This document shows, piece after piece, positions 5,081 through 63,162 of a stretch of 64,000 nt of DNA. Source of the stretch: Dendrobates tinctorius (Eukaryota); NCBI RefSeq assembly GCF_039654945.1, contig NW_027361792.1:4092001-4156000 (forward strand), given 5' to 3'. Made by a program: the position numbers and the translations under genes. How positions within the stretch are numbered: position 1 is the stretch's first letter; each line of letters begins with the position of its first letter. The notes under the pieces are model-generated. The model saw only the letters and a list, made by a program, of their open reading frames with translations. It had not been told where the DNA came from and did not search any database.

Positions 5081-7270
5081 CAAGTAGAGTTCTAAGTAAC
5101 ATCAAGAAGGAGGAACTTGAGTTTAATACGCAACTACAAGTACTTCAGATTAGGCGCTAGTGTGGAGACGTTCAGAGAAGGCACATGTTGGAGGAGTGCT
5201 GGAAAGGTGTACTTTACCTTGCCTGGGAGTTGGCTGAGCCCCTGACCTGGAGGACATGGCACTGAAGTGGGCATCTGTGCGCACCAGACTGTGAGTAAAG
5301 CCTTTGGAACTACATGCCCTTGTGTCCTCCACTTATTCCTGCGCCTTGCACCCGGCTCTGCTGCATCTACTTGTTTACACCACCTCCCCATTTACCAACC
5401 TCATATACTCTGCCCTGGGACTACAGCTCCACCTGTGGGGAGCTTCATCATCATTGCGGCACCACACCATCTGTCCCAGAGAAGCAACTCTGCAGCGCTG
5501 GTCAAACTGACCAGAAACCACAGATGGCGTCACGAATCATCCACTTATAAACTTTAATCAGCCACATTTCACCCCTTTTACATGGACGCCAAGGGCCACG
5601 GACCGGGTCACCACTACTGTGACACTTCCCTCTGAGATACCGGCCCAATACCGAGTACCCCACTGCCCTGGCGGGCGATCCACAGGCACAATGGGAAAAC
5701 TCATGTCCAAATGGCGTTGGTGGGAGCTATTCAAGAAGACAGGACTTGGTTCAATACCACTTGTTATGGTCTTAGGCTGGCACCTGCCTAATAAAGCCAA
5801 GTATCAAGACAGTATTTCTAGACCAAGTTCTGCGCCTTCGAATATTTCCCTTCAGCGCCAACTGGACCTAATATTTATGTGTCTTCTTTAGGTGAGGTAA
5901 CCTTTTTGCACCCACTTTGATTTGCTTGGTTAAATTTTAGGTTTACATTGGAAACCTAAAGGGGAGGTTATAGCCAATTATACAGTATATATGGAAATCG
6001 CCTATAAAGCCCTTCAGAGGCAGAACTTGAAACTCCTGGATCCAATGCATAATCAGTAAAAGGGTTTCCGCCTGCATGTGCCATTTAAAAAATTAACTAT
6101 AGGAGAAGGATCGGCGGTGGTATCCAGGCGCTGCCAACAATGTCACAAGTATTGCAGCTGTGTGTAACTACTAACCCTCTACCCCATACCTCTGCATATA
6201 GCTACACCCTGATAACAAAAAATATGTACGTTAGGAAAATGCTATCAGGTTTTTCCCCTTGTGAGCAGTAACCTTTTAAATACGAAGACCATATGGAGAC
6301 CAATTCCCAGTGCTTTTCCTGTAGTCAGAACTTCTGATCTTTGGGTCTATGGGTTCACCAGAGGTGAAGTCATGCATAGGCGCATACATAGTGGAAAGGC
6401 CAGCTCATAGCAAAGTTCAGCACAGGTCTCTAATTTGTGCTAGTCGTTCTCTTTGTTGCTTTGATTTTTGGTATTTCACCTTTTGTTTGCCAATATTATT
6501 GGACTTGTGGAGAGGAGAATGTTCTGTCCTCTAGTCTATTCCCTTTACCTTACATAAAGAAGTCAAATATTTGCAATGATCAATCTAAGAATCGATATTA
6601 GTAGTAGCTAGATAACGTTGAAGGCAACTACATTGGTGCTTCAAGGACCAGTTGGGACTCCATGCCTGCTCAAGCCTACTTACAAGCTATGTGAATAAGT
6701 AGACTATGATGACATGATACGTAAATGTGATAGGCAGATTCTCAAAAGTCTATTTTTTTTTTTTCTTTTTTTAACAAAGCCTATAAGTTTTCTTCAGAGT
6801 CTATGGAGAAGACTAAACAGACAGGGTGGGAAAAAGAATGAAAATGTTCCAAACTTGGGCATGAACTGGAAAGTTAATAACTTCAAAAATATTTGTTCAA
6901 GTGTCTGCCTTGAGATGATGAAAAATATAAGTAGAGAAATATGTATAAAAAAGAATCCATGTAATTGATACGGTCTAATCGTCTAATCTTTCTCACGATC
7001 TAGACAATGTGATGAGCTGCAAGCGATGAATGATAATTTCTCATATGTTCTGTCGCAGAAACCTTTCACAGTGTTAAATACCATAGAAATCCATATTTGG
7101 AGTCTAACATGGTACAAAAAAATAGAACCCAAATGTACTTCTTTAGTATTTTATATTTTGTTTAACTCTATCCTATATAGGTCACCAAGCCGAGCAATAG
7201 CTTGAGGCCACCGGAAACCAACTTGGCCAGTCCATTTTTGACAGGTGACAGTCGGGTGTTGGCCATCTAA

Positions 7271-16282: not shown

Positions 16283-19200
16283 CTATTCTGATCTTTGCAC
16301 CCAGAAGTAGTCCCAAGGAGCCCAGACCGAGTTAAAGGATTCCATCTTTGCATTGAGTATCGCAGTCATATACCCCATCCGTCTAATATTATTAATTCTG
16401 TAAAGTAGATGGAGGAAAGGCGGCAAGGAAACCTGCCTCCAATTGAGGGCAATCAACCACCTTGCCGCTGTAAGAATGTGAAGTAACAGCTTTGCTGCCC
16501 TTTTCCCCATTCCCCTAGGGGTAACATTTAGCAGATATATAGTGGGATCTAGCCCAACTTCAGCATAAAGCACCTTGGAAATCAGTGAACTTCCTTCCAA
16601 AAATTCTGATTCTCTGAACACATCCAGAAAATATGAAACAATGTACCCCCATCCCGGCCGCAATGCCAGCACACATTTGGAATCGCAGGGTTCAGTCTAT
16701 TCAGAAGACCGGGAGTGTGATACCAAAACATTAATATCTTGTACTGATTCTCTTTATAGAGGGTACACATAGATGATTTTGCCGCCTTCTCCCAAATGAT
16801 ATACCATTTTTGGGGCGAGAGTTCCCTACCCAGAACAGATTCCTATCTGCTCATGTAGGGATGTTTTGGTTGACGGCCGTCTTGAGGGGAACAGAGAATT
16901 TTATAGATTTCTGAAATCAAACCTTTAGTCATCGTCCCCTTGTAAAGCCTCTCAAAATCAGTTGGGAGGGAGATTCCCGAGGAGCCAAAAAGGGAAGAGG
17001 CAAAATGCTTGATTTGTAAATATTGGTAGGGTACAATTCTTTATTAGTAATGGAGAATTTAGATTTAACTTCAGCAAATGAAAGCAGCCCAAGCGTGTCC
17101 CTGTCCACCACATCCGTGAATCTATATAGGCCTGCAGGGACCAAGGATGGGCAACTGCATGTTCCAGACTGCTTGGTAACAGGGGTTGGAGAATGAAGGA
17201 AATCATAGGCGAATTTGGAGAGGCTAAACCAAACTTCTTCATACATGTATGCCAAAATTCCCTTGTATATCGAATTGTGCCCAAAAGGGGCTCCGGAATT
17301 ATCACAGTCCTTTTGGACCATAGCAAAGAATGATGGATTGGGGCCAACCACAACTTCTCTATTTCTGTCTATTTATTGTAGGCCAAAAATGAGGCCCTCA
17401 AAGGGATTCTACGAAGATGAGCAGCCCAATAATATATAGTTATGTCTGGAACCGATAGTCCTCCCTGTGACTTAGGGGAGACGAGGACACGCCTAGAGAT
17501 CCGATGACGACCATCTTTCCAAAGGAACCTCATCATAGCCGCCTGGAGAGACTTGAGCTCACTCATGGGAACCTTGATTGGCAGGGTCTCAAAATAATAG
17601 AGTAGTTTGGGGAGGAGGGACATCTTGAGTGAGGAAATCCTACCCAAAAAGGATATCGGGAGCAGCTTCCATTTATCTGGCAATCTCTTCAGCTCAGTCA
17701 AGAGTGGCGGGAAGTTGGAACTATATAAGTTGTTGTAAGAGGAGGAAAGCTTAACCCCAAGTATTGAATATTTTCAACTTTCCACCTGAATTTAAAATTC
17801 ATCTTCAGGTGATCCAGTAGAACTGGGGGGGGTGTTCAATGGGAGGGCCTCAGTTTTTGACGCGTTCAACTTATACCCCGACAAATCACCATATATTTTA
17901 AGATCATCCAAAAGATTAGGCAATGTAACATGAAGATTAGTCAGAGTCAAGAGAATATCGTCAGCAAATAAGGAGATCTTAAACATCTTATCCCGAACCT
18001 CTGTTCCTGAAATGTTTGGATTTTGCCTGATCATAGCCGCTAGTGGCTCAATGCATAAAGCATATAATAGGGGCGATAGAGGGCAACCCTGACGGGTCCC
18101 ATTGGATATTTTACATTGGGATGTCGTATGGAAGGGGAGCTTGATGGAGGCAATGGGAGCGTTGTACCGTACTCTTATAGCTGCTAGGAAGGGGCCCGAG
18201 AAACCAAAGGCCATTAAGGTTTCAAACATGAAGGACCATTTAAGGCGGTCAAATGCCTTTTCCGCATCTAGACTCAATATCAGAGACTGTAGTTTATTTT
18301 TGTTAGCTACATCAATTAAGTCTATCGCCCTTCTAGTGTTGTCTCCCTCCTGCCGGTTAGGATCAAAACCCACCTGATCCTTTGTTGATGAGCTAAGGGA
18401 GCCAACAGTTCAACCTATTAGCCAACAAGTGAGTGAACACCTTAAAATCAGAGTTCAACAGCGCTATTGGCTGGTAGTACGAACACTCTAGGGGATCCTT
18501 CCCCACCTTTGGGATAAGAACCAAGTAGGAATGGGCCAATGTTTCCGGCATGTGGGAGTCCTCCAAGAAAGAGTTAAAGAGAGGGGAGAGCTCTTCTGCA
18601 AAGGTTTTGTAGCACAAATATGTCAGCTTGTCAGGACCGGGAGACTTGCCCGAGGGGAGGTCAGCTAGTATGTCGAGGATCTCCTCCCGCGTCACACTCC
18701 GGTTAAGAGACTCCAAAGCTACCGAGAGAAGAGTTGGTAGAGTTAAGCTTGAGAGATATTGGCGCAGTAATCCCCTTCAATCAGATTTGTTTGGGTATAT
18801 CAGTATCTTGTAAGTTGCATAATTTGCTATAGAAACTATAGAACAGATCTGAAATTACAGCAGGATCATAGTGGATCGTACCATCAGAACCTCTCAAAGC
18901 CTGAGCATGGGAACTTAGCGCTCTATCCTTTAACATCCTGGCCAAAAGAGTGTGGGCTTTGTTACCCTTTTCATAATACTTTTGCTTAGAGTAGAGAAAG
19001 AATGTTTTTCGATCCAGCATAACGTTATATCTTTCAATTTATCTCTGAGCGCCACAACTCTATTCAAGGCCCCAACTGATGGTGAGGCTACCAACAAACG
19101 CTCCTCAGCTGCCAACTGAGTGGTCAATTTATCATATTCCGCACTGACGTTTCTTTTTAATCTAGAACCTTCTTTCATGCAGTGCCCCCTCATAACTGCT

Positions 19201-28542: not shown

Positions 28543-29829
28543 TGGGTCGCCCTCCCAGGGATGTGGGATACTCGGTACCGGGCCGGTATCAGTGGGATGT
28601 GTCACAGCAGCAGTGACCCGGACCGTGGCCCTGGGCGCCCAAGTAATAGGAAAATGTGAATGGTGGAATGTAGTTAGATGGATAGTTCGTGACGCCACCT
28701 GTGGTGTTCAGCAAGGGAGGTGTTAAGCCGACGCTGCATGCAGATCCGCTGGGACTGATGTTATGGTGCAGCAAAGATGTAAAAGCTCCCCACAGGTGAA
28801 GCTGTAGTTCCAGGGCAGTGTAGATGTGGTTGGCACGGGGATGTAGCAGTGCCGGAAAGGTAGGAAGCAGACAAGACACAGCGGGGTGCAATTTCTATAC
28901 CTTTACTTGATAAATGCAGTCCAGGGTCCTGATTACAGATGGTACCGGAGCAGGCTAGCCTGGAAGCAACTCAGGAATTCTCTCTCAGCAGATGGGCTGT
29001 GCAGTCTCCTTCCTAGCGCTTACTTAAGGGATCTTCAGTACTGAGTTACACTAGAGTTCCTCCTGTCAGATGTTCCCAAGAACTCTACTTGTACGGCAGA
29101 CAACTGTAGCCTGTTCCAGGGACTCCTCACTCCTAAGTCCCGGCTCACTATCCGTGTTGCTGTTGTGCCCTCAAGTCTTAGATGGGAGTATTGCATTTAC
29201 AGCCTTCTACTCCTCTGGTGTCTGCTGTAGGACCATCAGTGTCCATACAGCCGTGGAGACCAGGCTCCAGTTCATGCGCTCTTATGGGAGATGAGCTCTT
29301 CCTCTCAGCTCTATCTCAGCGCTCCTTCCACATGTCTGCACACTTCACCCTCTGCAGACTAACTACCCACTCCTTCCTCTTGGCCCTCAGAGAGCACTCC
29401 TCCCCTGAATTCCGGTTCAGAGCTCCCCCTGCTGGCCTGGAGTGGAACTGTGTTGCATACATAGATTGACTGCGAGAGAGACCCGTCATTGCCTCCAAGC
29501 CTGGCATTGCACAAGGAAAGACTAGAAGCAATGGGATGAAACTGAATGGGAGAAGACACAGATTAGATATTAGAAAAAACTTTTTGACAGTTAGAGTGAT
29601 CAATGAGTGGAACAAGCTGCCACGAGAAGTGGCGAGTTCTCCTTCAGTGGAAGTCTTCAAACAGAGGCTGGACAGACATCTGACTGGGATGATTTAGCGA
29701 ATCCTGCTTTGAGCACGGGGTTGGACCAGATGGCCCAGGAGGTCCCTTCCAACTCTACGATTCTATGATTCTACCCTCCCTGGAGGAAGGAAAAGCCACT
29801 GTGGCGGCCATACTCCTGGGGGCGCCACA
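28543..29829 (-). mobile_element. Solo LTR, same family as 3797-5682, with CR1 insertion
   Basis: TG...CA termini and TSD CTCA (28539-28542 / 29830-29833). Reverse-complement similarity to 3797-5682. Confidence 0.75.
29507..29773 (+). mobile_element. 5'-truncated CR1 LINE 3' end
   Basis: Near-identical to the 3' end of the CR1 at 34827-35090. Ends in (ATTCTRTG)-type repeats CGATTCTATGATTCTA. Confidence 0.9.
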
Positions 29830-31296: not shown

Positions 31297-33132
31297 ATGG
31301 TATACAGCCCAGCACAGTATACAGCGCAGCACGGTATATAGCCCAGCACAGTATACAGCCCAGCTTAGTAAATATCCCAGCACTGTATAAATCCCAGCAC
31401 AGTATACAGCCCAGCATAGTATATAGCCCAGCACGGTATACAGCCCAGCACAGTATACAGCCCAGCACTGTATAAATCCCAGCACAGTATACAGCCCAGC
31501 ACAGTATACAGCCCAGCATAGTATACAGCCCAGCATAGTATACAGCCCAGCATGGTATACAGCCCAGCATAGTATACAGCCCAGCATAGTATACAGCCCA
31601 GCATGGTATATAGCCCAGCACAGTATACAGCACAGCATATAGCCCAGCACAGCATATAGCCCAGCACGGTATACAGCCCAGCATGGTATACAGCCCAGCA
31701 CGGTATACAGCCCAGCACGGTATACAGCCCAGCATGGTATACAGCCCAGCACGGTATACAGCCCAGCACGGTATACAGCCCAGCACGGTATACAGCCCAG
31801 CACGGTATACAGCCCAGCACGGTATACAGCCCAGCATGGTATATAGCCCAGCATGGTATATAGCCCAGCATGGTATATAGCCCAGCACGGTATACAGCCC
31901 AGCACAGTATACAGCCCAGCACTGTATAAATCCCAGCACAGTATACAGCCCAGCACAGTATACAGCCCAGCATAGTATACAGCCCAGCATAGTATACAGC
32001 CCAGCATGGTATACAGCCCAGCATAGTATACAGCCCAGCATAGTATACAGCCCAGCATAGTATACAGCCCAGCATGGTATATAGCCCAGCACAGTATACA
32101 GCACAGCATATAGCCCAGCACAGCATATAGCCCAGCATAGCATATAGCCCAGCACGGTATACAGCCCAGCATGGTATACAGCCCAGCACGGTATACAGCC
32201 CAGCACGGTATACAGCCCAGCATGGTATACAGCCCAGCACGGTATACAGCCCAGCACGGTATACAGCCCAGCACAGTATACAGCCCAGCATGGTATATAG
32301 CCCAGCATGGTATATAGCCCAGCACGGTATACAGCCCAGCACGGTATACAGCCCAGCATGGTATACAGCCCAGCATGGTATACAGCCCAGCATGGTATAC
32401 AGCCCAGCACGGTATATAGCCCAGCACGGTATACAGCCCAGCTTAGTATATAGCCCAGCACAGTATGCAGCCCAGCATAGTATATAGTCCAGCACGGTAT
32501 ACAGCCCAGCATGGTATATAGCCCAGTGCAGTATATAGCCCAGCAAAGTATATAGCCCAGCTTAGTAAATAGCCCAGCACAGTATACAGCCCAGCACAGT
32601 ATACAGCCCAGCACAGTATACAGCCCAGCACAGTATACAGCCCAGCATAGTATATAGCCCAGCATAGTATATAGCCCAGCATAGTATATAGCCCAGCATA
32701 GCATATAGCCCAGCATAGCATATAGCCCAGCACGGTATACAGCCCAGCATGGTATATAGCCCAGCATGGTATATAGCCCAGCATGGTATATAGCCCAGCA
32801 CAGTATACAGCCCAGCATAGCATATAGCCCAGCACGGTATACAGCCCAGCACGGTATACAGCCCAGCATGGTATATAGCCCAGCATGGTATATAGCCCAG
32901 CACGGTATACAGCCCAGCATGGTATATAGCCCATCACAGCATGGTATACAGCCCAGCATGGTATATAGCCCATCACAGCATGGTATACAGCCCAGCACGG
33001 TATACAGCCCAGCACGGTATACAGCCCAGCACGGTATACAGCCCCTGCACGGTACACAGCCCAGCACAGTACACAGCCCAGCACAGTACACAGCCCAGCA
33101 CAGTACACAGCCCAGCAGAGTACATAGGCAAG
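31297..33132 (+). repeat. 15-bp satellite (GTATA(C/T)AGCCCAGCA(C/T)(A/G)), left part
   Basis: Over 100 tandem 15-mers. The array resumes after the Gypsy element at 41133. Confidence 0.95.
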
Positions 33133-33826
33133 TGTTGTGAGTTCATTTTCCCCTTCACCGTTGATGTCTGATGAACTCCCTCTGCTGGTGAAGAGAGGTA
33201 GTGAAATTGATTGGGTTGAGAAGAACATGTCGTCATCTGAACAGGTGGAGCCTGATTGGACACCCAGAATCACTGAGTGGATATAAGGCAGCCGACGCCC
33301 TACCGGGGTGCTGGTGATCCTTTCTGCTCTGACCTCTTGCAACCAGTTAGTCCTGTCTACTGAAAGCTAAGTTTTTGCGCTCTTATTTTTCCATGAGATT
33401 TTGTCTGTTTGCTTCGTGTTTTGTGTTCAGCCTGCCTTTGTTGGGAAGGGCTGAGCTCCATTTTTGTCTCTGATCAGTTTATCTCTTTGCTCTGTTTTCA
33501 GAATATACCTGAGTGCTGATATAGTGATTTTGAAGTCTAGCGACTTCAGGGCCTTTTTCCCTATCAGACGGTTTGGACATTTTTGGTAGGGTTTTTTGCA
33601 GATTGCAGCCAGCATCTTTTCTGTCCTTTCCTATTTAGTTAGTTGGGCCCCATCGTTTGCTCAACCTGTCTTTCTGTCTGTGTTTTCATCTGCTTTTCAC
33701 CGACAATACATGTTGGGGGCTGTCTATTGCTTTGGGGTCTGCAATCCGACAGCTACCAACCTCTCCGGTTTTCTGGACTTAGCTTGTATTTTTGTTTTTT
33801 CCTCCTTCGGTGACTCATTCATAACA
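33133..33826 (+). repeat. 5' LTR
   Basis: Near-identical to 40510-41132 apart from a 68-bp and a 3-bp indel. TATAA at 33282. Confidence 0.95.
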
Positions 33827-33828
33827 GA

Positions 33829-33837
33829 ATCACCAGC
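33829..33837 (+). promoter_or_regulatory. Self-priming primer-binding site
   Basis: ATCACCAGC just after the 5' LTR is the exact complement of GCTGGTGAT (33310-33318), which lies 28 nt after the LTR TATA box. There is no TGG tRNA-type PBS. Confidence 0.7.
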
Positions 33838-33983
33838 CATACCGCAGATTCTAGGGTACTCAATAGCAGGAAAGAATTGTAAAAAAAAAAAAAAAAAAAG
33901 TGTCAGAATTTTTTTTTTTTTTTTGTGTGTGTATATTTTTTCCTCTATGTCTTTGAGGCCGTAGGGGGAATTTTTTCTTCTCA

Positions 33984-34721
33984 ATGGAGATGAAGCAATT
34001 GTCTAATCGTGTGGAGCAGCTCGCTGCTGAACTGCAGGGAATTTCCGCCTATCTTGCTCATTCACATGTTGCTGAGCCAAAGATCCCTACTCCTGATGTG
34101 TTTTTTGGGGATCAGTCTAAATTTCTGAACTTTAAGAATAATTGTAAATTATTTTTTGCCTTGAAGCCTAACTCATCAGGGAGCTCCGCACAGCAGGTTA
34201 AAATTGTCATCTCTTTGCTGCGCGGCGATCCTCAGGTTTGGGTGTTTTCCTTGAAACCTGATGATCCTATTCTAACTAATGTGAACGCATTTTTTCAAGC
34301 CTTGGGGCTGTTGTACGATGAACCTAATGCTATTGATCAGGCTGAAAAGGCCCTGTTGGCATTGAGCCAGGGTCAGGATTCTGCAGAGTTGTACTGTCAA
34401 AAATTACGAAAGTGGGCGGTCCTTACTACCTGGAATGATGGTGCCTTGGCAGCTCTCTTTCAGAAAGGTTTGTCAGAAACCGTAAAAGATACTATGGTGG
34501 GATTTCCTGTTCCCTCTGGTCTTGACGATTCTATGTCATTAGCCATTCAGGTTGATCAGCGTTTGCGTGAACGCAAAACTGCATGAGAGGGGTTGCCACC
34601 TGTTGAACAAATGTCTGAACCTATGCAATGTGATAGAGTTTTGTCTAGGGCGCAATGTCAGGAGTTCAGAAGGCGTAATAAGCTGTGTTTTTTCTGTGGA
34701 GATGCCTCGCATATTATTTCT
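33984..34721 (+). pseudogene. Gypsy gag (Retrotrans_gag, CCHC knuckle), premature stop at 34584 and insertion at 34722
   Basis: Motifs PDVFFGD..F..C.L.F, LSQG..SAE.Y, EPMQ and CFFCGDASHIIS|VC. The frame continues across the stop codon. Confidence 0.9.
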
Positions 34722-34826
34722 AAATATGCAAAACAGAAGCCGCGGAGACACCATCACATGTTTCTCAACGCAAGCAGTGACTAGCCAGGTCTTTCCCCGG
34801 GAAGGAACAACCACGGGAAGGGCAGT

Positions 34827-36365
34827 CATAGAATCGTAGAGTTGGAAGGGACCTCCTGGGCCATCTGGTCCAACCCCCTGCTCAAAGCAGGATTCGCTAA
34901 ATCATCCCAGTTAGATGTCTGTCCAGCCTCTGTTTGAAGACTTCCATTGAAGGAGAACTCACCACTTCTCGTGGCAGCCTGTTCCACTCATTGATCACTC
35001 TAACTGTCAAAAAGTTTTTTCTAATATCTAATCTGTGTCTCCTCCCATTCAGCTTCATCCCATTGCTTCTAGTCTTTCCTTGTGCAAATGAGAATAAAGT
35101 TGATCCTTCTACAATGTGACAGCCCTTTAGATATTTGTAGACAGCTATTAAGTCTCCTCTCAGTCTTCTCTTTTGCAAACTAAACATTCCCAAATCCTGC
35201 AACCTTTCCTCATAAGACAGGGTTTGCAGACCGGTCACCATTCTGGTCGCTCTTTTCTGAACTTGCTCCAGTTTGTTGATGTCTTTTTTAAAATGTGGTG
35301 CCCAAAATTGGACACAATATTCCAGATGAGGTCTGACCAAAGAGGAGTAGAGGGAAATAATTACTTCACGTGATCTAGACTGTATGCTTCTGTTAATACA
35401 TCCTAGAATTGCATTTGCCTTTTTTGCTGCTGCATCACACTGTTGACTCATATTCAGTCTGTGATCTATTAGTATACCCAAGTCTTTTTCACATGTGCTG
35501 TCACTTAGCCCTATTCCTCCCATTCTATATATGCTTTTTTCATTTTTATTGCCCAGATGTAGTACTTTGCATTTCTCCCTGTTAAAAACCATTCTGTTAG
35601 TTACTGCCCACTTCTCCAGTTTATTTAAATCTTTTTGAATCCTCTCTCTCTCTTCTCTAGTATTAGCTATCCCTCCTAGCTTTGTGTCATCAGCAAATTT
35701 AATCAGTTTACCCTCAATTCCTTCATCTAAATCGTTGATAAAGATGTTGAACAATACAGGGCCCAGGACAGAGCCCTGTGGTACCCCACTTGAGACATTC
35801 TTCCAACTGGATGTGCAGCCATTTACGACCACTCTTTGGGTCCGATCACTAAGCCAGTTATGAATCCACCTAACAGTTGCTTTGTCCATTCCATACTTAG
35901 TCATTTTTTCAATAAGGATTGTATGAGAGACTTTGTCAAATGCTTTGCTGAAGTCAAGATATACTATATCTACAGCATTTCCTTGATCCACCCAATCAGT
36001 AATACCATCATAGAAGGAAATTAAATTAGTCTGACATGACTTATTAGTTACAAACCCATGCTGACTCTGTTTAATCACTTCATTCTTATCCAGGTATTGA
36101 CATACATGTTGTTTAATAATTTGTTCAAAGATCTTTCCTGGTATAGAAGTCAGACTCACCGGCCTATAGTTGCCTGGGTCCACCTTCTTCCCCTTTTTGA
36201 AGATAGGAACAACATTTGCTCTTCTCCAGTCTTCTGGCACTTCTCCTGTTCTCCAAGAATTTTCAAAGATTATGGAGAGGGGTTCAAAAATTTCTTCTGC
36301 TATCTCCTTCAGTACTCTGGGGTGTAATTCATCTGGACCTGGAGACTTGAATACATTTAGGTTAG
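34827..36365 (-). mobile_element. 5'-truncated CR1 LINE
   Basis: Uninterrupted RT and C-terminus, CR1 3' UTR and TTCTACGATTCTATGA-type tail. It splits the retrozyme sequence GGCAGT|CTCCAATG. Confidence 0.95.
34897..36365 (-). CDS. CR1 ORF2 reverse transcriptase domain (5'-truncated, open)
   Basis: Motifs KSPGPDELHPRVLKE, NYRPVSLTS, YLDFSKAFD, GVPQGSVLGP and KFADD. The first residues of the listed ORF (MVSFIG) come from the flanking retrozyme. Confidence 0.85.
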
Positions 36366-36406
36366 CTCCAATGAAGGAAACCACCTATGCCAAAACATGG
36401 TATCCA

Positions 36407-36451
36407 TCCACAGACAGCTGTTTCGGGGTATTTGCCCCTCATCAGTGTGGA
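36407..36451 (-). ncRNA. Minimal type I hammerhead ribozyme, intact
   Basis: UCCACA-CUGAUGA-GGGG-CAAAUA-CCCC-GAAA-CAGCUG-UC^-UGUGGA, with palindromic helix III ACAGCUGU. Predicted GUC cleavage between 36413 and 36412. Confidence 0.9.
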
Positions 36452-36759
36452 GTAGGAAACTGGCTAGTAGGAGCAATGCCTAGTAGAAGACTGTGTAAAA
36501 TGAGGATGATTGACCGCATGGAGATCAACATCCAACACTGCGGAGACACCATCACGTGTTTCTCAACGCAGTGATTCTAGAGCACTACCCCCATACCTTA
36601 TGGGAAATATGCAAAATATGCAAAACAGAAGCCGCGGAGACACCATCACATGTTTCTCAACGCAAGCAATGACTAGCCAGGTCTTTCCCCGGGAAGGAAC
36701 AACCACGGGAAGGGCAGTCTCCAATGAAGGAAACCACCTATGTCAAAACATGGTATCCA

Positions 36760-36804
36760 TCCATAGACAGCTGTTCCGGGGTATTTGCCCCTCATCAGTG
36801 TGGA
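36760..36804 (-). ncRNA. Minimal type I hammerhead ribozyme, mutated core
   Basis: Same motif, but GAAA is changed to GGAA and helix I has a mismatch (UAUGGA). Confidence 0.8.
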
Positions 36805-37103
36805 GTAGGAAACTGGCTAGTAGGAGCAATGCCTAGTAGAAGACTGTGTAAAATGAGGATGATTGACCTCATGGAGATCAACATCCAACACTGCGGAGAC
36901 ACCATCACGTGTTTCTCAACGCAGTGATTCTAGAGCACTGCCCCCATCCCTTATGGGAAATATGCAAAACAGAAGCCGCGGAGACACCATCACATGTTTC
37001 TCAACGCAAGCAATGACTAGCCAGGTCTTTCCCCGGGAAGGAACAACCACGGGAAGGGCAGTCTCCAATGAAGGAAACCACCTATGCCAAAACATGGTAT
37101 CCA

Positions 37104-37148
37104 TCCACAGACAGCTGTTTCGGGGTATTTGCCCCTCATCAGTGTGGA
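37104..37148 (-). ncRNA. Minimal type I hammerhead ribozyme, intact
   Basis: Identical to 36407-36451. Confidence 0.9.
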
Positions 37149-37199
37149 GTAGGAAACTGGCTAGTAGGAGCAATGCCTAGTAGAAGACTTATTATTTCT

Positions 37200-40100
37200 G
37201 TCTGCCCTAAACGAGAGAAACGCTTTGCACACACATTTGTTGTGGGTGGTGTTCAACCTAAGTTTCTTCTGGTAATTACTCTGATCTGCTCCCTGTCCAC
37301 ATTTTCCGCTAAGGCTTTTGTGGATTCGGGAGCAGCTCTGAACCTGATGGACTTGGATTTTGATAAACGTTGTGGATTTCCTATGACACCTCTGCGGACA
37401 CCTATCCCTTTGAGGGGTATTGATGCTACTCCTTTGGCGAAGAATAAACCTCAGTTTTGGACCCAGGTGGTAATGCGGGTCACCCCAGACCATCAAGAAA
37501 ATTGCAGATTTTTGGTGTTGCATAATCTGAATGATACCATTGTTTTGGGGTTTCCCTGGTTGCAAATATATAATCCAGTTTTGGATTGGAAATCAGTGTC
37601 TGTGGTGAGTTGGGGTTGTCGGTGTGCCCTTAGTGACGCTCCTGTTTTCTCCACCTCTCCCCAGTCGCATGATGTTCCTGACTATTTGGCTGACTTTTAT
37701 GATGCATTTAGTGAGAATGAGTCTGCGTCTTTGCCTCCTCATAGGAGTTATGACTGTGCAATTGAGCTGAGCCCTGGATGTAAATTTCCCAAGGGTCGAC
37801 TTTTCAATTTATCTGTACCAGAGCACGAGGCTATGCGATCCTATATTAAGGAGTCGTTGGAGAAGGGTCATATTAGACCATCCTCTTCACCCTTAGGTGC
37901 TGGTTATTTTTTCAAGGCCAAGAAGGATGGTTCATTAAGGCCTTGTATTGACTATCGTTCCCTCAACAAAATTACTGTTAAATATCAGTATCCGTTACCC
38001 CTGATTTCTGATCTATTCTCTAGAGTTAAAGGTGCTTGCTGGTTTACCAAGCTTGACCTCAGGGGGGCGTATAATCTTATTCGCATTAAGCATGGGGATG
38101 AATGGAAGACGGCGTTTAATACTCCAGAGGGACATTTTGAGTACCTGGTGATGCCTTTTGGGCTCACTAATGCCCCTTCTGTCTTCCAGTGCTTCATGAA
38201 TGATATTTTCCGAGACTTTGTGGATAAATTTTTGATCATCTATCTGGATGATATTTTGATCTTTTCCAAGGATTGGGACTCTCATGTGGAACATGTTCGG
38301 ACTGTGTTCCGGATTTTGAGGGAGAATTCCCTATATGTCAAGGGATCTAAATGCCTTTTTGGGGTACAGAGGATTTCATTTTTGGGATTTATTTTGTCTC
38401 CGTCAACTATTGAAATGGACCCGGCCAAGGTACAGGCCATTTATGATTGGGTTCAGCCCACTTCTTTGAAGGCCCTCCAGAAGTTTTTGGGTTTTGCTAA
38501 TTTTTATCGTAAATTTATAGCTAATTTTTCTGGTATTGCCAAACCATTGACTGATTTGACTAAGAAGGGTGGTGATGTGTTGAATTGGCCTCCGGAGGCT
38601 GTTTCTTCCTTTAGGGAGCTAAAGTGAAGGTTCACTTCTGCTCCGGTTTTGCGGCAACCTGATGTCTCACTCCCGTTTCAGGTAGAGGTGGACGCTTCTG
38701 AGATTGGTGCAGGAGCTGTTTTGTCCCAAAAAGATCCGGTAACATCTAAAATGAATCCCTGTGCTTTCTTTTCCCGAAAGTTCTCCCCATCTGAACGTAA
38801 CTATGATGTGGGAAATCGGGAACTGTTGGCCATGAAATGGGCATTTGAGGAGTGGAGACATTGGTTGGAGGGAGCTAGACATCAAGTCGTGGTCCTTACT
38901 GACCACAAGAAATTGATTTACCTGGAGTCGGCCAAACGCTTGAATCCTAGACAGGCTAAGTGGGCCTTGTTTTTCACACGTTTTGATTTTGTGGTCTCTT
39001 TTCTTCCAGGCACTAAGAATGTCAAAGCAGACGCCCTCTCTAGAAGTTTCTTTGCTGATTCTCCTGTTGTGACCAAGCCTGCTACCATCTTAGGTGAGGG
39101 GGTAGTTCTTCCTGCCATCTCGCCCGATTTGAGACGTGCTCTGGAAGTGTTTCAGGAGGACAAACCTGAGCGTTGTCCCATTGGAAAATTGTATGTTCCT
39201 GACCAGTGGAGGAAGAGAGTGATGTCTGAAGTTCATTGCTCTGCATTGGCTGGTCATCCAGGTATTTTTGGTACTAGAGATTTGGTGAGTCGGTCCTTTT
39301 GGTGGCCCGCCTTGTCTCGTGATGTCAGGAGTTTTGTGCAGTCCTGTGGGACTTGCTCCCGGTCTAAACCTTGTTCTCGCTCTACTGGGTTGCTGATGCC
39401 TTTGCCGGTGCCCAGGAGGCCATGGACCCATATTTCAATGGATTTTATCTCTGATATGCCTGTCTCTCAGAGAATGACTGTTATTTGGGTGATAGATTCT
39501 CTAAGATGGTCCATCTTGTACCACTCCCTAAGTTGCCATGTTCCTCAGAGTTAGTGCCCTTGTTTTTGCAACAGGTGGTTCGCTTGCACGGGATTCCTGA
39601 GAACATTGTATCTGACAGAGGAGTTCAGTTTATTTCTACATTTTGGAGGACTTTCTGTTCCAAGCAGAGAATTCAGTTGTCCTTCTCCTCTGCGTTTCAC
39701 CCTCAGACCAATGGGCAGACGGAGAGAACAAACCAGACTTTGGAGTCGTATTTGAGATGTTTTATTTCTGCTGATCAGGATGATTGGGTTTCATTTTTGC
39801 CCTTGGCCGAATTTGCTTTAAATAATAGAGCTAGTTCTGCCACTTTGATGTCACCTTTTTTTTGTAACTTTAGGTTTCATCCTCGATTCTCTTCAGGGCA
39901 GGTGGAGTCTTCTGCCTGCCCAGGTGTTGACACTGTGGTGGAGAGAATGCACCAGATCTGGGACCAAGTGGTGGATAGGTTGTCTCTCTCCCAGGAAAAG
40001 GCCCAGCGGTTTTCCAACCGTCATAGGACCATTGGTCCCCAGTTTAAGGTGGGTGATATGGTTTGGTTGTCATCAAAGAATATCTCTATGAAGGTGGCTT

Positions 40101-40509
40101 CTCCAAAGTTTAAACCTAGATTTATTGGACCTTACAAGATTTTGGAGATTCTTAATCCTGTCTCTTTTCGATTGGCTCTTCCTGTTACATTTAAGATCCA
40201 TAACGTGTTTCATAAGTCTCTGTTAAAGAGGTTTGTTGAGCCAGTAGTTCCTGTGGCGGCACCTCCTGACCCTGTATTTGTGGAAGGTAATGTGGAATAT
40301 GAGGTTGAGAAGATACTGGATTCTCGCCTGGCTAGACGGAGACTCCAGTATTTGGTTAAATGGAAGGGTTATGGCCAGGAGGATAATTCTTGGGTCCCTG
40401 CATCCGATATTCATGCCGAAAGATTGGTTTGTGCTTTTCATCGGGCCCATCCTGATCGTCCTGGTGGCGTGGATGAGGGTTCGGTGACCCCTCCTCAAGG
40501 GGGAGGTAC
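37200..40509 (+). pseudogene. Gypsy pol: protease, RT, RNase H, integrase, chromodomain (stop at 38625, frameshift near 39490)
   Basis: Motifs FVDSGA, LRPCIDYR, YLDDILI, VEVDAS, ERNYDVGNRELLA, H..HPG..C..C, SDRG.QF, HPQTNGQTER, GPY and EYEVEKILDSR..YLVKWKGYG.EDNSW. Confidence 0.95.
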
Positions 40510-41132
40510 TGTTGTGAGTTCATTTTCCCCTTCACCGTTGATGTCTGATGAACTCCCTCTGCTGGTGAAGAGAGGTAGTGAAATTGATTGGGTTGAGAAG
40601 AACCTGTCATCTGAACAGGTGGAGCCTGATTGGACACCCGGAATCACTGAGTGGATATAAGGCAGCCGACGCCCTACCGGGGTGCTGGTGATCCTTTCTG
40701 CTCTGACCTCTTGCAACCAGTTAGTCCTGTCTACTGAAAGCTAAGTTTTTGCTCTCTTATTTTTCCATGAGATTTTGTCTGTTTGCTTCGTGTTTTGTGT
40801 TCAGCCTGCCTTTGTTGGGAAGGGCTGAGCTCCATTTTTGTCTCTGATCAGTTTATCTCTTTTTCCCTATCAGACGGTTTGGACATTTTTGGTAGGGTTT
40901 TTTGCGGATTGCAGCCAGCATCTTTTCTGTCCTTTCCTATTTAGTTAGTTGGGCCCCATCGTTTGCTCAACCTGTCTTTCTGTCTGTGTTTTCATCTGCT
41001 TTTCACCGACAATACATGTTGGGGGCTGTCTATTGCTTTGGGGTCTGCAATCCGATAGCTACCAACCTCTCCGGTTTTCTGGACTTAGCTTGTATTTTTG
41101 TTTTTTCCTCCTTCGGTGACTCATTCATAACA
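40510..41132 (+). repeat. 3' LTR
   Basis: Follows the PPT and matches the 5' LTR. Confidence 0.95.
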
Positions 41133-50631: not shown

Positions 50632-51849
50632 CACTCACTGGCCACTTTATTAGGTACACCATGCTAGTAAGGGGTTGGACCCCCTTTTGCCTTCAGAACT
50701 GCCTCAATTCTTCGTGGCAGAGATTCAACAAGGTGCTGGAAGCATTCCTCAGAGATTTTGGACCATATTGACATGATGGCATCACACAGTTGGCGCAGAT
50801 TTGTCGGCTGCACATCCCTGATGCGAATCTCCCGTTCCACCACATCCCAAAGATGCTCTATTGGATTGAGATCTGGTGAATGAGGAGGCCATTTGAGTAC
50901 AGTAAACTCATTGTCATGTTCAAGAAACCAATCTGAGATGATTCGAGCTTTATGACATGGCGCATTATCCTGCTGAAAGTAGCCATCAGATGTTGGGTAC
51001 ATTGTGGTCAAGGGATGGACATGGTCAGCAACAATACTCAGGTAGGCTGTGGCGTTGCAACGATGCTCAATTGGTACCAAGGGGCCCAAAGAGTGCCCAG
51101 AAAAAATTCCCCACACCATGACACCACCACCACCAGCCTGAACCGTTGATACAAGGCAGGATGGATCCATGCTTTCATGTTGTTTACGCCAAATTCTGAC
51201 CCTACCATCCGAATGTCGCAGCAGAAATCGAGACTCATCAGACCAGGCAACGTTTTTCCAATCTTCTACTGTCCAATTTCGATGAGCTTGTGCAAATTGT
51301 AGCCTCAGTTTCCTGTTCTTAGCTGAGAGGAGTGGTACCCAGTGTGGTCTTCTGCTGCTGTAGCCCATCTGCCTCAAAGTTCGACGCACTGTGCGTTCAG
51401 AGATGCTCTTCTGCCTACCTTGGTTGTAACGGGTGGCAATTTGAGTCACTGTTGCCTTTCTATCAGCTCGAACCAGTCTGCCCATTCTCCTCTGACCTCT
51501 GGCATCAACATGGCATTTCCGGCCACAGAACTGCCGCTCACTGGATTTTTTTTCTTTTTCGGACCATTCTCTGTAAACCCTAGAGATGGTTGTGCGTGAA
51601 AATCCCAGTAGATCAGCAGTTTCTGAAATTCTCAGACCAGCCCTTCTGGCACCAACAATCATGCCACGTTCAAAGGCACTCAAATCACCTTTCTTCCCCA
51701 TACTGATGCTCGGTTTGAACTGCAGGAGATTGTCTTGACCATGTCTACATGCCTAAATGCACTGAGTTGCCGCCATGTGATTGGCTGATTAGAAATTAAG
51801 TCTTAACACACAGTTGGACAGGTGTACCTAATAAAGTGGCCAGTGAGTG
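50632..51849 (-). mobile_element. Tc1/mariner DNA transposon, DD36E (Incomer-type), full length
   Basis: Perfect 29-bp TIRs CACTCACTGGCCACTTTATTAGGTACACC, TA TSD, 1218 bp total. Confidence 0.95.
50664..51701 (-). CDS. Tc1-family transposase, 345 aa, DD36E
   Basis: Paired-like [19 protein letters not shown] and [11 protein letters not shown]. There are 36 residues between the second D and the E. Confidence 0.92.
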
Positions 51850-59999: not shown

Positions 60000-62015
60000 T
60001 GCCATGCTTGAACTTAAAGCTACCAGCTCAGGTCTCCCCAGTGCCAGTACCAGCTCAGGTCTCCCCAGTGCCAGTACCAGCTCGGGTCTCCCCAGTGCCA
60101 GTACCAGCTCGGGTCCCCCCAGTATCAGCACCAGTGTAGTAGGGTGGGCCGGGCTGGGGGGTGGTCCCCTGCTCACCGCGAACAGACGATAAGACACGAG
60201 ACGGAGGCAGATTTTTAGGTACAACAGGTCCGAGTTTATTGGCCGTCTTCCTGACAACCTCAGCAATCCACCGCAGCACTACCACAGCTCTCCGTATTCA
60301 GGCCCGGGTACCTGCACTTCTCTTCTGTTCGTAGTGACATTTCTTTACGGCTCAACTACTGGGGCTGCCCTAGGCCTTTCCACCGCCAGCACTTCATCGG
60401 TCAGAGGTCGTCGTCAATTTGGTACCCCCGGGGCCTCGTCTGTTCTGCTCTGCGGTTCTTTGTGTCAGGGCCACCCCCCTGACTTCCCTTCTCCTCAGTC
60501 CCCTTAGTTAAGCTCTCCACACAGCACACACTCCGTCACAGACTCATCTCCTCTTGAGCTCTTCCCGGGACTGGAACTTTCTGGAACCCTCCTGTCCTAT
60601 TTATAACTTTCCCGGTTCCCTATAACTCCGCCCCCCATGACCAACAGTTTCTCTAGCCATAAGCTGCTGTCAAGTCCTAAACTCACACTCCCCTGCCATC
60701 TTGTGGTCAACCCAAGATACTGCACTCAATCTACACTTTTCCCAGATGTTTCCCTAGTGTAATTACAAACATACGCCTACAGTGCACAAACCATCCCTTC
60801 TTCTTGCTGACAAGTCCATCCGTCAGGTCACCTTCCTCACACTCCCCTTCCTTTGTCTATTGTCGTCCTCAACAATCGTATTCCCTACCTTCGTCGTTCT
60901 GAAGCTTTCCTACTGTCAGTTGTCGGACTGGTTGTTGGGCTAACCCCGCCATACGCGGGGGCCGAACCAAAACGGGAGCACCATGCTCCGAGCAGCCTAC
61001 TGCTACTCGCCGGTGCGCACGCCACCTGCACAAACCATCCCTTCTGCTTGCTGACAAGTCCGTCAGGTCACCTTCCCCACACCAGTTCGGGTCTCCCCAG
61101 TACCAGCACCAGCTCGGGTCTTCCCAGTACCAGCTCGGGTCTACCCAGTACCAGCAATAGCTGGGGTCAACCCAGCACCAGCTAGAGTCTCCCCAGTACC
61201 AGTAGCGGCTCGGGTCTCCCCAGTACCAGTAGCGGCTCAGGTCTCCTCAGTACCAGTAGCGGCTCAGGTCTCCTCAGTACCAGTAGCGGCTCAGGTCTCC
61301 CCAGTACCAGTAGCGGCTCGGGTCTCCCCAGTACTAGTACCGGCTCGGGTCTCCCCAGTACTAGTACCGGCTCGGGTATCCCCAGTACTAGTACCGGCTC
61401 GGGTATCCCCAGTACTAGTACCGGCTCGGGTATCCCCAGCACTAGTACCGGCTCGGGTATCCCCAGTACCGGCTCGGGTATCCCCAGCACTAGTACCGGC
61501 TCGGATCTCCCCAGTACCAGCTCGGGTATCCCCAGTGCTAGTACCGGCTCGGGTATCCCCAGTACTAGTACCGGCTCGGGTATCCCCAGTACAGGCTTGG
61601 GTATCCCCAGCACAGGCTTGGGTATCCCCAGCACTAGTACCGGCTCGCGTATCCTCAGTACCAGCAACAGCTCGGATCTCCCCAGTACCGGCTCGGGTAT
61701 CCCCAGTACTAGTACCGGCTCGGGTATCCCCAGTACTAGTACCGGCTCGGATCTCCCCAGTACTGGCTTGGGTATCCCCAGCACTAGTACCGGCTCGGGT
61801 ATCCCCAGTACCAGCAACAGCTCGGATCTCCCCAGTACCGGATCGGGTATCCCCAGTACTAGTACCGGCTCGGGTATCCTCAGTACTAGTACCTGCTCGG
61901 GTATCCCCCAGTACTAGTACCAGCTTGGGTATCCCTACTACCAGATCGGGTCTCCCCATTACCAGTACCAGCTCAGGTCTCCCCTCTACCAGCTCTGGTC
62001 TCCCCAGTAACAGTA
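60000..62015 (+). repeat. 21-27-bp minisatellite (CCCAGTACCAGCTCGGGT(C/A)TC), interrupted by an LTR element
   Basis: Tandem units at 60020-60134 and 61082-62015. Confidence 0.85.
60135..61081 (-). mobile_element. Internally deleted LTR element (5' LTR stub, PPT, complete 3' LTR)
   Basis: TSD CCAG on both sides. The LTR start is repeated at 61081 and 60841. A purine tract (PPT) lies at 60842-60854 on the - strand. Confidence 0.7.
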
Positions 62016-63162
62016 CCGGGGTATACCATGTGGCTTCTACAGGGTCCTAATCCCTTAATTAAGACTCCTCTCCTGGCTCAAAAAAAAAAATTGGCCTTAT
62101 GGTAACGTAGATGTTGGGGGAAAAACAACCACCCATCCCTTGTGTCCTAAATGGCAAAAGCCAACACTGACTAGGTTGGGCCCTAGTATGATCTTGGGGC
62201 CACTTCATATGGAGATGACAATCTAATTTCCACTTTTGGAAATAAATTTCCATAAGGTCTTTTCCTTTTTCGCAAAACCACAACACCCTTAATGTCCCAC
62301 CCCCGGGACACGTAGGCAAAGTCTGATGTCACAGTAGGTTAATAGCGTTGGGATGCTTTGAGTGCTTCCTCCTGGAAATCTCTCTTTTTTTTCTGGGACC
62401 CTTCAGGACATTTTGGGGGCATTTTAATAGTATTCTCCACTCCCAGACACATAATGGGTGCAGTTTCATAGGAAAACAATCAGATTTCCGGAGTAAAGAT
62501 TTGACCTAGGATCACTACTCTGCTAGGGTGCTTGTGAATTACTGCGTCATCCATGCGGTTCGGCTGATATAATAAAGGAGGCATCTTAGAATAAATACAG
62601 TCTTCCTATGTGGTCTCTACCTGTGCACCCCTATAGATACAGCCCTGCTAATAGTTGGGTGCTTTACATGGCGTCTGCAGGTGTTTCTGGGACTCGGGCT
62701 GTGCCGCCTCCTCTTGTGTCAATATGTACAAACGTATTTTATATCCTGGCACTTGTAAAGCATTTATAACATCCCGGACAATCTACCATCCACAGGAGCC
62801 ACGCAGTTATAGGGCTCTATTGTTATCAACGGCTTCTGGCTAAATAAAATCTTAGGAGGGCATAAATGATGGTATTTGTTTATAGTCTGTCACCATGGTG
62901 ACTCATAATTCTGTACTGGAGCTGTATTACAAGATGGTAATAAATTTATCAAGGCTATCTGAAAGTTTGCATCCTTTTTTTTTAACTTTAGGGGCATAAT
63001 TTCCAAACCTGTAGATATCCTTAAACCCCTTTAAGTGGGTTGACAATGTGTTTTGTGATTTCATTCTCTGATTCCTCTTCTTCGAAGAGCCAAAAGTTTT
63101 TTTTTGTTTTTCCATTAACAAAGTCGGACAGATGAAGTTTTGAATGCCACCATTCACTTTAC

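What the first reader, a model, noticed from the sequence alone, without database searches (positions are those of the whole stretch)
34712..37199. Recently mobilised hammerhead retrozyme array with exact TSD, inserted in a gag zinc knuckle
Seen: ~2.7 tandem copies of a non-coding 344-nt unit with three minimal type I hammerheads on the minus strand (UCCACA-CUGAUGA-GGGG..CCCC-GAAA-CAGCUG-UC^UGUGGA), bounded by a perfect 10-bp TSD TATTATTTCT. Removing the insertion restores C-FF-C-GDAS-H-IISV-C. This fixes the boundaries exactly and shows it moved after the young Gypsy inserted. Known: newt satellite 2 and metazoan non-LTR retrozymes are tandem ~150-400-nt hammerhead units that give monomeric or circular RNAs, cleave as dimers through a palindromic helix III, and are thought to be mobilised by Penelope-like elements. 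Inference: an active anuran retrozyme family producing a ~344-nt circRNA.
Basis: partly seen in the sequence, partly recalled or inferred. Interest (0 to 1): 0.9.

Follow-up and report, generated by a model that had tools for sequence, protein, structure and literature searches.

The report
Frog hammerhead retrozyme insert in Gypsy
A 929-base string of 2.7 copies of a non-coding repeat carrying a self-cutting (hammerhead) RNA motif was pasted into a Gypsy retrotransposon and later hit by a LINE; it is a clean example of a repeat class (non-LTR retrozymes) already described in amphibians.

Summary
A perfect 10-bp duplication (TATTATTTCT) flanks the insert at 34722-37189. Other copies of the same Gypsy family in public runs lack the insert and join at exactly that point. 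Removing it restores a CCHC zinc knuckle.

The insert is 2.70 head-to-tail units (344 and 353 nt) with three hammerhead motifs on the minus strand.
- 62% of the interval (34828-36365) is a later, 5'-truncated CR1-like LINE nested inside one unit.
- Only two of the three hammerheads are intact. The middle one has a core change (GAAA to GGAA) and a helix I mismatch.

The motif is the canonical metazoan type I hammerhead: 6-bp helix I, 4-bp helix II and a palindromic helix III. It is not the "minimal" Penelope type. Rfam RF00163 matches it full length at 26.9 bits, below the gathering score of 34.

It fits non-LTR retrozymes, catalogued in axolotl (2020) and in all seven amphibians sampled in a 2026 preprint. 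This scan has already reported similar ~350-nt retrozyme inserts elsewhere in this genome.

"Active" and "344-nt circRNA" are untested, because only assembled contigs were available. A Penelope-like mobiliser is inferred from the literature, not shown here. The finding is ordinary: a new member of a known kind.

The parts
34712..34721 (.). Left copy of the 10-bp target-site duplication TATTATTTCT
   Evidence: empty-site joints
34722..34827 (-). 106-nt partial retrozyme unit. In RNA sense it is the 3' end of the insert and ends ...UUUUGCAUAUUU.
   Evidence: 99% identical to 36614-36719 and 36958-37063
34828..36365 (-). Nested 5'-truncated CR1-like LINE, with an open RT frame and the 3' tail ...ACGAUUCUAUGA. 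Its boundaries are uncertain by 1-2 nt because of microhomology with the target GGAG^ACUG.
   Evidence: RVT_1 E 6.8e-36; translation; a second 3' fragment at 29507-29766 is 97.3% identical; other copies end at about 34826 with varied flanks and run on past 36367
36366..37189 (-). 2.4 tandem retrozyme units (353 and 344 nt, plus 127 nt)
   Evidence: TRF period 353, 96% matches
37104..37148 (-). Hammerhead 1, intact. Predicted cut after GUC, between 37110 and 37109.
   Evidence: Rfam RF00163 positions 1-45/45, 26.9 bits
36760..36804 (-). Hammerhead 2, with two changes: core A13 to G (36776) and a helix I C-A mismatch (36764)
36407..36451 (-). Hammerhead 3, intact. Predicted cut between 36413 and 36412.
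36605..36622 (.). AAATATGCA repeated twice. This 9-nt duplication makes this unit 353 nt. Its edge is the same unit position at which the insert ends (34722).
37190..37199 (.). Right copy of the target-site duplication
33133..41132 (+). Host Ty3/Gypsy chromovirus. LTRs at 33133-33826 and 40510-41132, then gag, PR-RT, RNase H, IN and a chromodomain. Besides the insert it is broken by in-frame stops at 34584 and 38625 and a frame change near 39452-39552.

Best explanation
The insert is one copy of a non-autonomous, non-coding hammerhead retrozyme (the non-LTR, amphibian satellite-2-like kind).

Inferred mechanism:
- An RNA longer than one unit was reverse-transcribed at a staggered nick in the gag zinc-knuckle codons of a Ty3/Gypsy element.
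- That RNA was either a monomer circle copied round and round or an uncleaved multimer. This locus cannot tell which.
- The result was 2.70 head-to-tail units between 10-bp target-site duplications, with no poly(A) and with ends out of phase with the ribozyme cut sites.
- The copying enzyme is most likely that of a Penelope-like element. This is inferred from the literature and by exclusion, and is not shown here.
- Afterwards a CR1-like LINE landed inside the 3'-most unit, and the middle hammerhead picked up two disabling changes.

In the family's source copies, the hammerheads would pair two by two through the ACAGCUGU palindrome, cut after GUC and release unit-length RNA. A host ligase could then circularise that RNA. 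This step is also inferred.
For: - Exact 10-bp duplication and restored knuckle.
- Empty paralogous sites with 10 ambiguous letters at the joint.
- 929 nt = 80 | 344 | 353 | 153 nt when cut at the GUC sites, so neither end lies at a cut site.
- Hammerhead core with a 6-bp helix I, a 4-bp helix II, the G10.1-C11.1 pair, and a 1-bp helix III closed by the palindromic AGCU loop.
- Full-length Rfam RF00163 match, with loop 2 CAAAUA identical to the Rfam consensus.
- In an alignment with 67 independent hammerheads of the same core, 89.7% of cells pair and all 10 variable pairs covary. Slid controls give about 30%.
- The cofold of two copies gives the double hammerhead at -46.7 kcal/mol, against 2 x -20.6 for two monomers.
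- The 344-nt monomer folds at -131.6 kcal/mol, z = -3.8, with helix I bringing its ends together.
- No reading frame is open for more than 105 codons. GC is 49%.
- Thousands of contigs of two organism labels match the unit, and a third label holds 25-30% of its sampled words.
- Short contigs in an RNA library of another label carry the hammerhead with 0-1 differences. Their helix I is changed compensatorily, from UCCACA/UGUGGA to UCUGCA/UGCAGA.
- Literature: PMC7229834, PMC4209133 and bioRxiv 10.64898/2026.07.22.740005.
Against: - The Rfam score (26.9 bits) is below the gathering score (34). Wider Rfam searches returned nothing.
- No cleavage, RNA ends or circles were shown. The RNA-library contigs could be DNA carry-over and belong to a diverged family.
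- In the 2026 preprint only 1 of 9 predicted Xenopus retrozyme dimers cleaved in vitro.
- No Penelope-like RT or GIY-YIG frame was found in the window, and the insert lacks the inverted 5' piece common in Penelope-style insertions.
- The units differ by 7 substitutions and a 9-nt indel, which is rather many for copies read off one circle. The excess over LTR divergence is not significant.
Confidence: 0.8

Rival explanations
1. The template was a linear RNA with a fixed 3' end at ...GCAUAUUU. The tandem arose because the reverse transcriptase jumped from the 5' end of one template to the 3' end of the next. No circle was involved.
For: The insert's 3' end (34722) coincides with the edge of the only length variant in the array, the 9-nt duplication at 36605-36622. 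By chance this is about 4 positions in 344, or 1.2%. Two unit lengths sit within one insert. There is no microhomology between the primer strand and the RNA at the 3' junction.
Against: It is one locus and one coincidence. The 9-mer repeat could slip after insertion. The 5' end is arbitrary under every model. No other copies could be inspected.
Confidence: 0.1
2. The copying enzyme was that of a LINE (CR1, L1/Tx1 or L2), not a Penelope-like element.
For: A young CR1 family with open RT frames is active at this very locus. 10-bp duplications also fit LINE-type target-primed copying. PMC7229834 leaves 'LINEs or PLEs' open.
Against: The insert's 3' end (GCAUAUUU) shares neither the CR1 tail (GAUUCUAU repeats) nor a poly(A). 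The CR1 insert here made a 0-2-bp duplication, not 10 bp. The tandem, out-of-phase layout and the family's relation to pLTRs point to Penelope-like elements (2026 preprint).
Confidence: 0.12
3. It is a coding-less fragment of a Penelope-like element (tandem pLTRs), not a separate non-autonomous family.
For: The 2026 preprint finds retrozyme consensus sequences sister to the pLTRs of Penelope-like elements. Most such insertions are 5'-truncated.
Against: There are 2.7 contiguous units with no ORF between them. The hammerhead is the canonical type (helix I 6 bp, helix II 4 bp). It is not the min-HHR that PMC4209133 reports in metazoan pLTRs (helix II 7-8 bp, helix I 4-5 bp).
Confidence: 0.08
4. 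The movement or growth was at the DNA level. Either a satellite circle reintegrated, or a shorter insert later expanded in place by unequal crossing-over.
For: The 2026 preprint favours local amplification for long arrays. The units here are not identical.
Against: A clean 10-bp duplication at a single empty site is the mark of staggered nicking and fill-in. Expansion in place needs at least a partial repeat to begin with. The array is only 2.7 units.
Confidence: 0.07

Closest known systems
Non-LTR (metazoan) retrozymes of amphibians: axolotl HHR_Amex1 family (Cervera & de la Pena 2020, PMC7229834) and Xenopus families (Li, Clavereau & Pollet 2026, bioRxiv 10.64898/2026.07.22.740005)
   Same: Tandem non-coding units of about 170-400 nt, each with a type I hammerhead. 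Helix III is weak and capped by a palindromic tetraloop, so cutting needs a dimer. GC is below 50%. Target duplications are longer than 4 bp. There is no LTR, PBS or PPT. The mean amphibian unit is 316 bp.
   Different: The unit sequence is this genome's own. This copy has a crippled middle ribozyme and a nested LINE. Expression and circles are not shown here.
Newt satellite 2 / Rfam RF00163 Hammerhead_1
   Same: Same 45-nt layout. Loop 2 CAAAUA is identical to the Rfam consensus. Helix III is modelled as a loop-less palindrome.
   Different: The score is 26.9 bits, below the gathering score of 34. Helix II is GGGG/CCCC and helix I is UCCACA/UGUGGA.
Penelope-like element pLTRs with min-HHR (Cervera & de la Pena 2014, PMC4209133)
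   Same: Type I hammerheads in tandem repeats, dimer-dependent, with target duplications of variable length.
   Different: There is no RT/GIY-YIG ORF. The hammerhead is the canonical type, not min-HHR. There is no inverted 5' piece.
Plant LTR retrozymes (PMC4918200)
   Same: Non-autonomous, with hammerhead-processed RNA proposed as a circular retrotransposition intermediate.
   Different: The plant elements carry type III hammerheads in LTRs, a PBS and PPT, 4-bp duplications and Gypsy-dependent mobilisation.

Membership tests
Hammerhead ribozyme, type I (RF00163) | Conserved core: CUGANGA, GAAA with the A15.1-U16.1 pair, and cleavage triplet GUH | tested here: met
   Two of three copies carry the full core. 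The middle copy has GGAA.
Hammerhead ribozyme, type I (RF00163) | Helices I and II with standard pairs, including G10.1-C11.1; the ends of the motif lie in helix I | tested here: met
   6-bp helix I and 4-bp helix II. All 12 pairs are standard. The same columns covary in 67 independent sequences.
Hammerhead ribozyme, type I (RF00163) | Score at or above Rfam's gathering score (34 bits) | tested here: not met
   26.9 bits, E 5e-5 in a 130-nt search. Nothing was listed in the wider searches. Control hammerheads from metagenome contigs score 31-39 bits.
Hammerhead ribozyme, type I (RF00163) | Self-cleavage after H17 | not testable with these tools
   Needs in vitro transcription of monomer and dimer.
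Metazoan non-LTR retrozyme | Head-to-tail non-coding units of about 170-400 nt, each with a type I hammerhead, and no LTR, PBS or PPT | tested here: met
   Units of 344 and 353 nt. The longest open stretch is 105 codons, with 15 stops per three-frame cycle.
Metazoan non-LTR retrozyme | Target-site duplication longer than 4 bp at the array ends | tested here: met
   10 bp, with empty paralogous sites.
Metazoan non-LTR retrozyme | [quoted passage not shown] 2026) | tested here: not met
   The intact motifs are the first and third. The one between them is mutated.
Metazoan non-LTR retrozyme | Unit-length linear and circular RNA in tissues | tested here: inconclusive
   All runs were contigs. One RNA library of another organism label holds 50-85-nt pieces of a related hammerhead module.
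Penelope-like element | RT plus GIY-YIG ORF between terminal repeats | tested here: not met
   None in the insert. None among the window ORFs scanned.
Penelope-like element | min-HHR architecture (helix II 7-8 bp, helix I 4-5 bp, no helix III) | tested here: not met
   Helix II is 4 bp, helix I is 6 bp, and helix III has a 4-nt loop; definition from PMC4209133.
Ty3/Gypsy chromovirus (host element) | LTR pair, gag with a CCHC knuckle, RT, RNase H, integrase and chromodomain in that order | tested here: met
CR1-clade LINE (nested element) | RT ORF, 5' truncation, short octamer-repeat 3' tail, little or no target duplication | tested here: met
   The clade name rests on my knowledge of CR1 tails. 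It was not checked by a phylogeny.

The most novel reading that the evidence does not exclude
The insert ends exactly at the edge of the array's only length variant, a 9-nt duplication at the same unit position. This hints that copying starts at a fixed 3' end of a linear RNA. The tandem copies would then be made by the reverse transcriptase jumping between templates, not by rolling round a circle. That would revise the accepted model for how animal retrozymes spread.
Probability: 0.1. Interest if true: 0.55.

Novelty: new member of a known kind. Interest (0 to 1): 0.25.

Why it matters
The locus is a tidy, dated nest: 17-nt satellite, then Gypsy, then retrozyme, then CR1. All four events fall within about 0.4-0.8% divergence, so three retroelement systems were active in the same short period in this genome. 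It is also a textbook multimer insert with exact boundaries. It adds no new principle. Retrozymes of this kind are already catalogued in amphibians, and this scan has reported similar inserts elsewhere in this genome. Its main use is as one data point for a census of insert ends and within-insert unit differences. That census could separate circle-templated from multimer-templated copying.

Tried and rejected
- **Rfam on wider stretches.** Searches of the whole window at gathering score and of 2.6 kb at E up to 10 gave nothing. The 130-nt search and positive controls show this was a matter of filters and threshold, not absence.
- **Metagenome scans.** The exact family-specific hammerhead found 0 matches. 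The generic pattern found 120 loci, but they come from other animals' DNA. They served only as covariation and Rfam controls.
- **Circle versus multimer template.** I compared unit-to-unit differences (7 in 929 nt) with host LTR differences (5 in 1,248 nt). The Fisher test gives p = 0.38, so nothing is decided.
- **Mutations in the middle hammerhead.** Two of the 7 substitutions fall there (p = 0.04 for that motif, 0.27 for any of the three motifs). I treat this as chance.
- **A coding reading of the unit.** The longest open stretch is 105 codons, on the strand opposite the ribozyme and with no ATG at its start. This is not beyond chance.
- **A Penelope-like partner in the window.** ORFs at 16-24 kb show only a decayed RVT_1 fragment and no GIY-YIG domain.
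- **RNA ends and circles.** No raw-read run was offered, and contigs cannot show ends. In a tandem array a back-joined read is identical to the genomic junction.
- **Earlier scan findings by sequence.** The look-up was blank.
- **Organism identity.** Names were coded. 'Frog' comes only from earlier scan notes.
- **House rules.** Read laying was given 3,101 letters. The only join made was a 102-nt join of the two flanks, to read the knuckle.
Full report
**What is there**

The interval 34712-37199 is bounded by a perfect 10-bp direct repeat, TATTATTTCT, at 34712-34721 and 37190-37199. Joining the two flanks gives KLCFFCGDASHIISVCPKREKR, a CX2CX4HX4C zinc knuckle in the frame of the upstream gag ORF.

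The boundary also has independent support. I laid contigs of public runs on 34400-37500. Several contigs of the best-holding organism label join 34711 to 37190, skipping 2,478 bases with 10 ambiguous letters. Dozens of loose ends at 34721 and 37190 read directly into the opposite flank. Other copies of this Gypsy family are therefore empty at exactly this site. The 2,468 bases between the repeats are an insertion that duplicated 10 bp of target.

**Anatomy of the insert**

The insert is not a plain array. It has three parts:
- 34722-34827: a 106-nt partial unit.
- 34828-36365: an unrelated 1,538-bp element.
- 36366-37189: 2.4 further units.

The middle element lies on the minus strand. It has an open 495-aa frame with a reverse-transcriptase domain (RVT_1, E 6.8e-36) and ends in ...ACGAUUCUAUGA. 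A second 260-bp 3' fragment of the same family at 29507-29766 is 97.3% identical and ends ...GAUUCUAUGAUUCUA.

In the public contigs, hundreds of copies end near 34826 with varied flanks, and others run on past 36367. This copy is therefore a 5'-truncated, non-site-specific LINE of CR1 type. It split the unit cleanly at GGAG^ACUG with 0-2 nt of overlap.

The finding does not mention that 62% of its interval is a LINE.

**The host**

The host is a Ty3/Gypsy chromovirus at 33133-41132, which sits inside a 17-nt satellite.
- Its LTRs (33133-33826 and 40510-41132) differ by 5 substitutions, a 3-nt indel and a 68-nt indel over about 623 aligned positions.
- Besides the insert, its long frame is broken by in-frame stops at 34584 and 38625 and by a frame change near 39452-39552.

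The order of events is satellite, Gypsy, retrozyme, CR1.

**The ribozyme**

The minus strand carries UCCACA-CUGAUGA-GGGGCAAAUACCCC-GAAA-CAGCUG-UC^UGUGGA.
- It occurs without change at 37148-37104 and 36451-36407.
- It occurs with two changes at 36804-36760. One is GAAA to GGAA at 36776, which is core position A13. To my knowledge that position does not tolerate change. The other is a C-A mismatch in helix I at 36764.

A generic type I descriptor finds the two intact copies and nothing else in the window, and nothing in 200 dinucleotide shuffles.

Rfam gave no match for the whole window or for 2.6 kb. On 130 nt, RF00163 Hammerhead_1 matches positions 1-45 of 45 at 26.9 bits, below the gathering score of 34. 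Every pair is standard, and loop 2 (CAAAUA) is identical to the model consensus.

As a control, hammerheads with the same core fetched from metagenome contigs score 31-39 bits. I aligned ours with 67 distinct such sequences. In that alignment:
- 89.7% of cells pair.
- All 10 variable pairs of helices I and II show double changes.
- Sliding the partners drops pairing to about 30%.

These sequences were selected by the core pattern, so only the helices count as evidence.

PMC4209133 defines the canonical metazoan type I hammerhead as having helix I of 6 bp, helix II of 4 bp, and helix III of 1-2 bp with a palindromic loop. Ours fits that definition. It does not fit the min-HHR of Penelope pLTRs, which has helix II of 7-8 bp and helix I of 4-5 bp.

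Folded alone, the motif does not form helix III. Two copies cofold into a double hammerhead through the 8-nt palindrome ACAGCUGU, at -46.7 kcal/mol against 2 x -20.6 for two monomers. The 344-nt monomer is more stable than its shuffles (-131.6 kcal/mol, z = -3.8), with helix I bringing its ends together.

**How it got there**

Cut at the GUC sites, the array reads 80 | 344 | 353 | 153 nt, so neither end of the insert is a ribozyme cut site. There is no poly(A), no similarity to the CR1 tail, and no microhomology at the 3' junction.

This fits target-primed copying of a template longer than one unit, as PMC7229834 proposes for metazoan retrozymes (a primed circular RNA giving tandem cDNA). It fits an uncleaved multimeric transcript equally well.

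I tried to separate the two by comparing differences:
- The units differ by 7 substitutions and one 9-nt duplication over 929 nt.
- The older LTR pair differs by 5 substitutions over 1,248 nt.
- The excess is not significant (p = 0.38).

One oddity remains. The insert's 3' end (...GCAUAUUU) falls exactly at the edge of the 9-nt duplication at 36605-36622, which by chance is about a 1% coincidence. It might mark a preferred start or template-jump point. One locus cannot carry that claim.

The Penelope-like mobiliser is inferred. The 2026 preprint (10.64898/2026.07.22.740005) finds retrozymes only where such elements occur and finds them related to pLTRs. No Penelope-like ORF was found in this window.

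**Activity**

Nothing here shows cutting or circles.
- Every run offered was assembled contigs, which cannot show RNA ends. In a tandem array a back-joined read equals the genomic junction.
- One library on record as RNA, from another organism label, holds 50-85-nt contigs over the hammerhead module (37035-37182) with 0-3 differences. Their loose ends show helix I changed from UCCACA/UGUGGA to UCUGCA/UGCAGA, which is two compensatory pairs. That points to a related, possibly transcribed family, but DNA carry-over is not excluded.
- This particular copy could at best release a 697-nt RNA between hammerheads 1 and 3. It fails the preprint's 'active' rule of two consecutive complete motifs.
- The preprint also reports that only 1 of 9 predicted Xenopus dimers cleaved in vitro.

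**Comparison and verdict**

The element meets the structural definition of a metazoan non-LTR retrozyme: tandem non-coding units, a canonical dimer-dependent type I hammerhead, a target duplication longer than 4 bp, and GC of 49%.

Such elements are described in axolotl (PMC7229834) and in all seven amphibians sampled in the 2026 preprint. Earlier notes of this scan list about 350-nt hammerhead retrozyme inserts with duplications elsewhere in this genome, and one follow-up called such an insert an ordinary example. I did not re-test those notes.

The finding is real and cleanly bounded, but it is a new member of a known kind.

Noticed in passing
window 34828-36365 and 29507-29766: Two 5'-truncated copies of one young CR1-like LINE family. 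The longer keeps an open 495-aa RT frame. Their 3' tails are repeats of GAUUCUAU. In the public contigs the 3' flanks vary, so the family is not site-specific.
   Followed up: partly
window 31299-33117 and 41133 onward: A 17-nt satellite (about 107 copies, GGTATACAGCCCAGCAC). The Gypsy element is inserted into it, and the satellite resumes after the 3' LTR. The candidate 6-bp Gypsy target duplication is GGCAAG / GGCCAG, with one mismatch.
   Followed up: partly
window 4413-5095: A different non-coding retroelement: a 418-nt tandem with a fold-back arm, flanked by CAAATAGAGTTCTAA / CAAGTAGAGTTCTAA. The scan has already followed it up as an HDV-like ribozyme candidate. It shows Penelope-style insertion 30 kb from the retrozyme.
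   Followed up: partly
window 36893-36923 versus 36978-37008, and the same positions in the other units: Each retrozyme unit contains an internal direct repeat of about 31 nt (...GCGUUGAGAAACAYGUGAUGGUGUCUCCGC...), 97% identical, with copies about 85 nt apart. Its role is unknown.
   Followed up: no
window 50664-51701 (-): An intact-looking 345-aa Tc1/mariner transposase ORF (HTH_Tnp_Tc3_2 and DDE_3 domains).
   Followed up: no
window 17792-18373 (-): A decayed reverse-transcriptase fragment (RVT_1, E 1e-24) amid broken ORFs at 16-24 kb. No GIY-YIG domain was found.
   Followed up: partly
L028:1264-1308 and 1605-1649; L001:1021-1065 and 1471-1515: Metagenome contigs, apparently animal DNA, carry pairs of RF00163-scoring hammerheads with the same GAAACAGCUGUC helix III. 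In L028 the two are 341 nt apart on one strand, which looks like a retrozyme array of another animal.
   Followed up: partly
window 61087-62019: A 27-nt satellite of about 31-37 copies. It produces long spurious ORFs.
   Followed up: no
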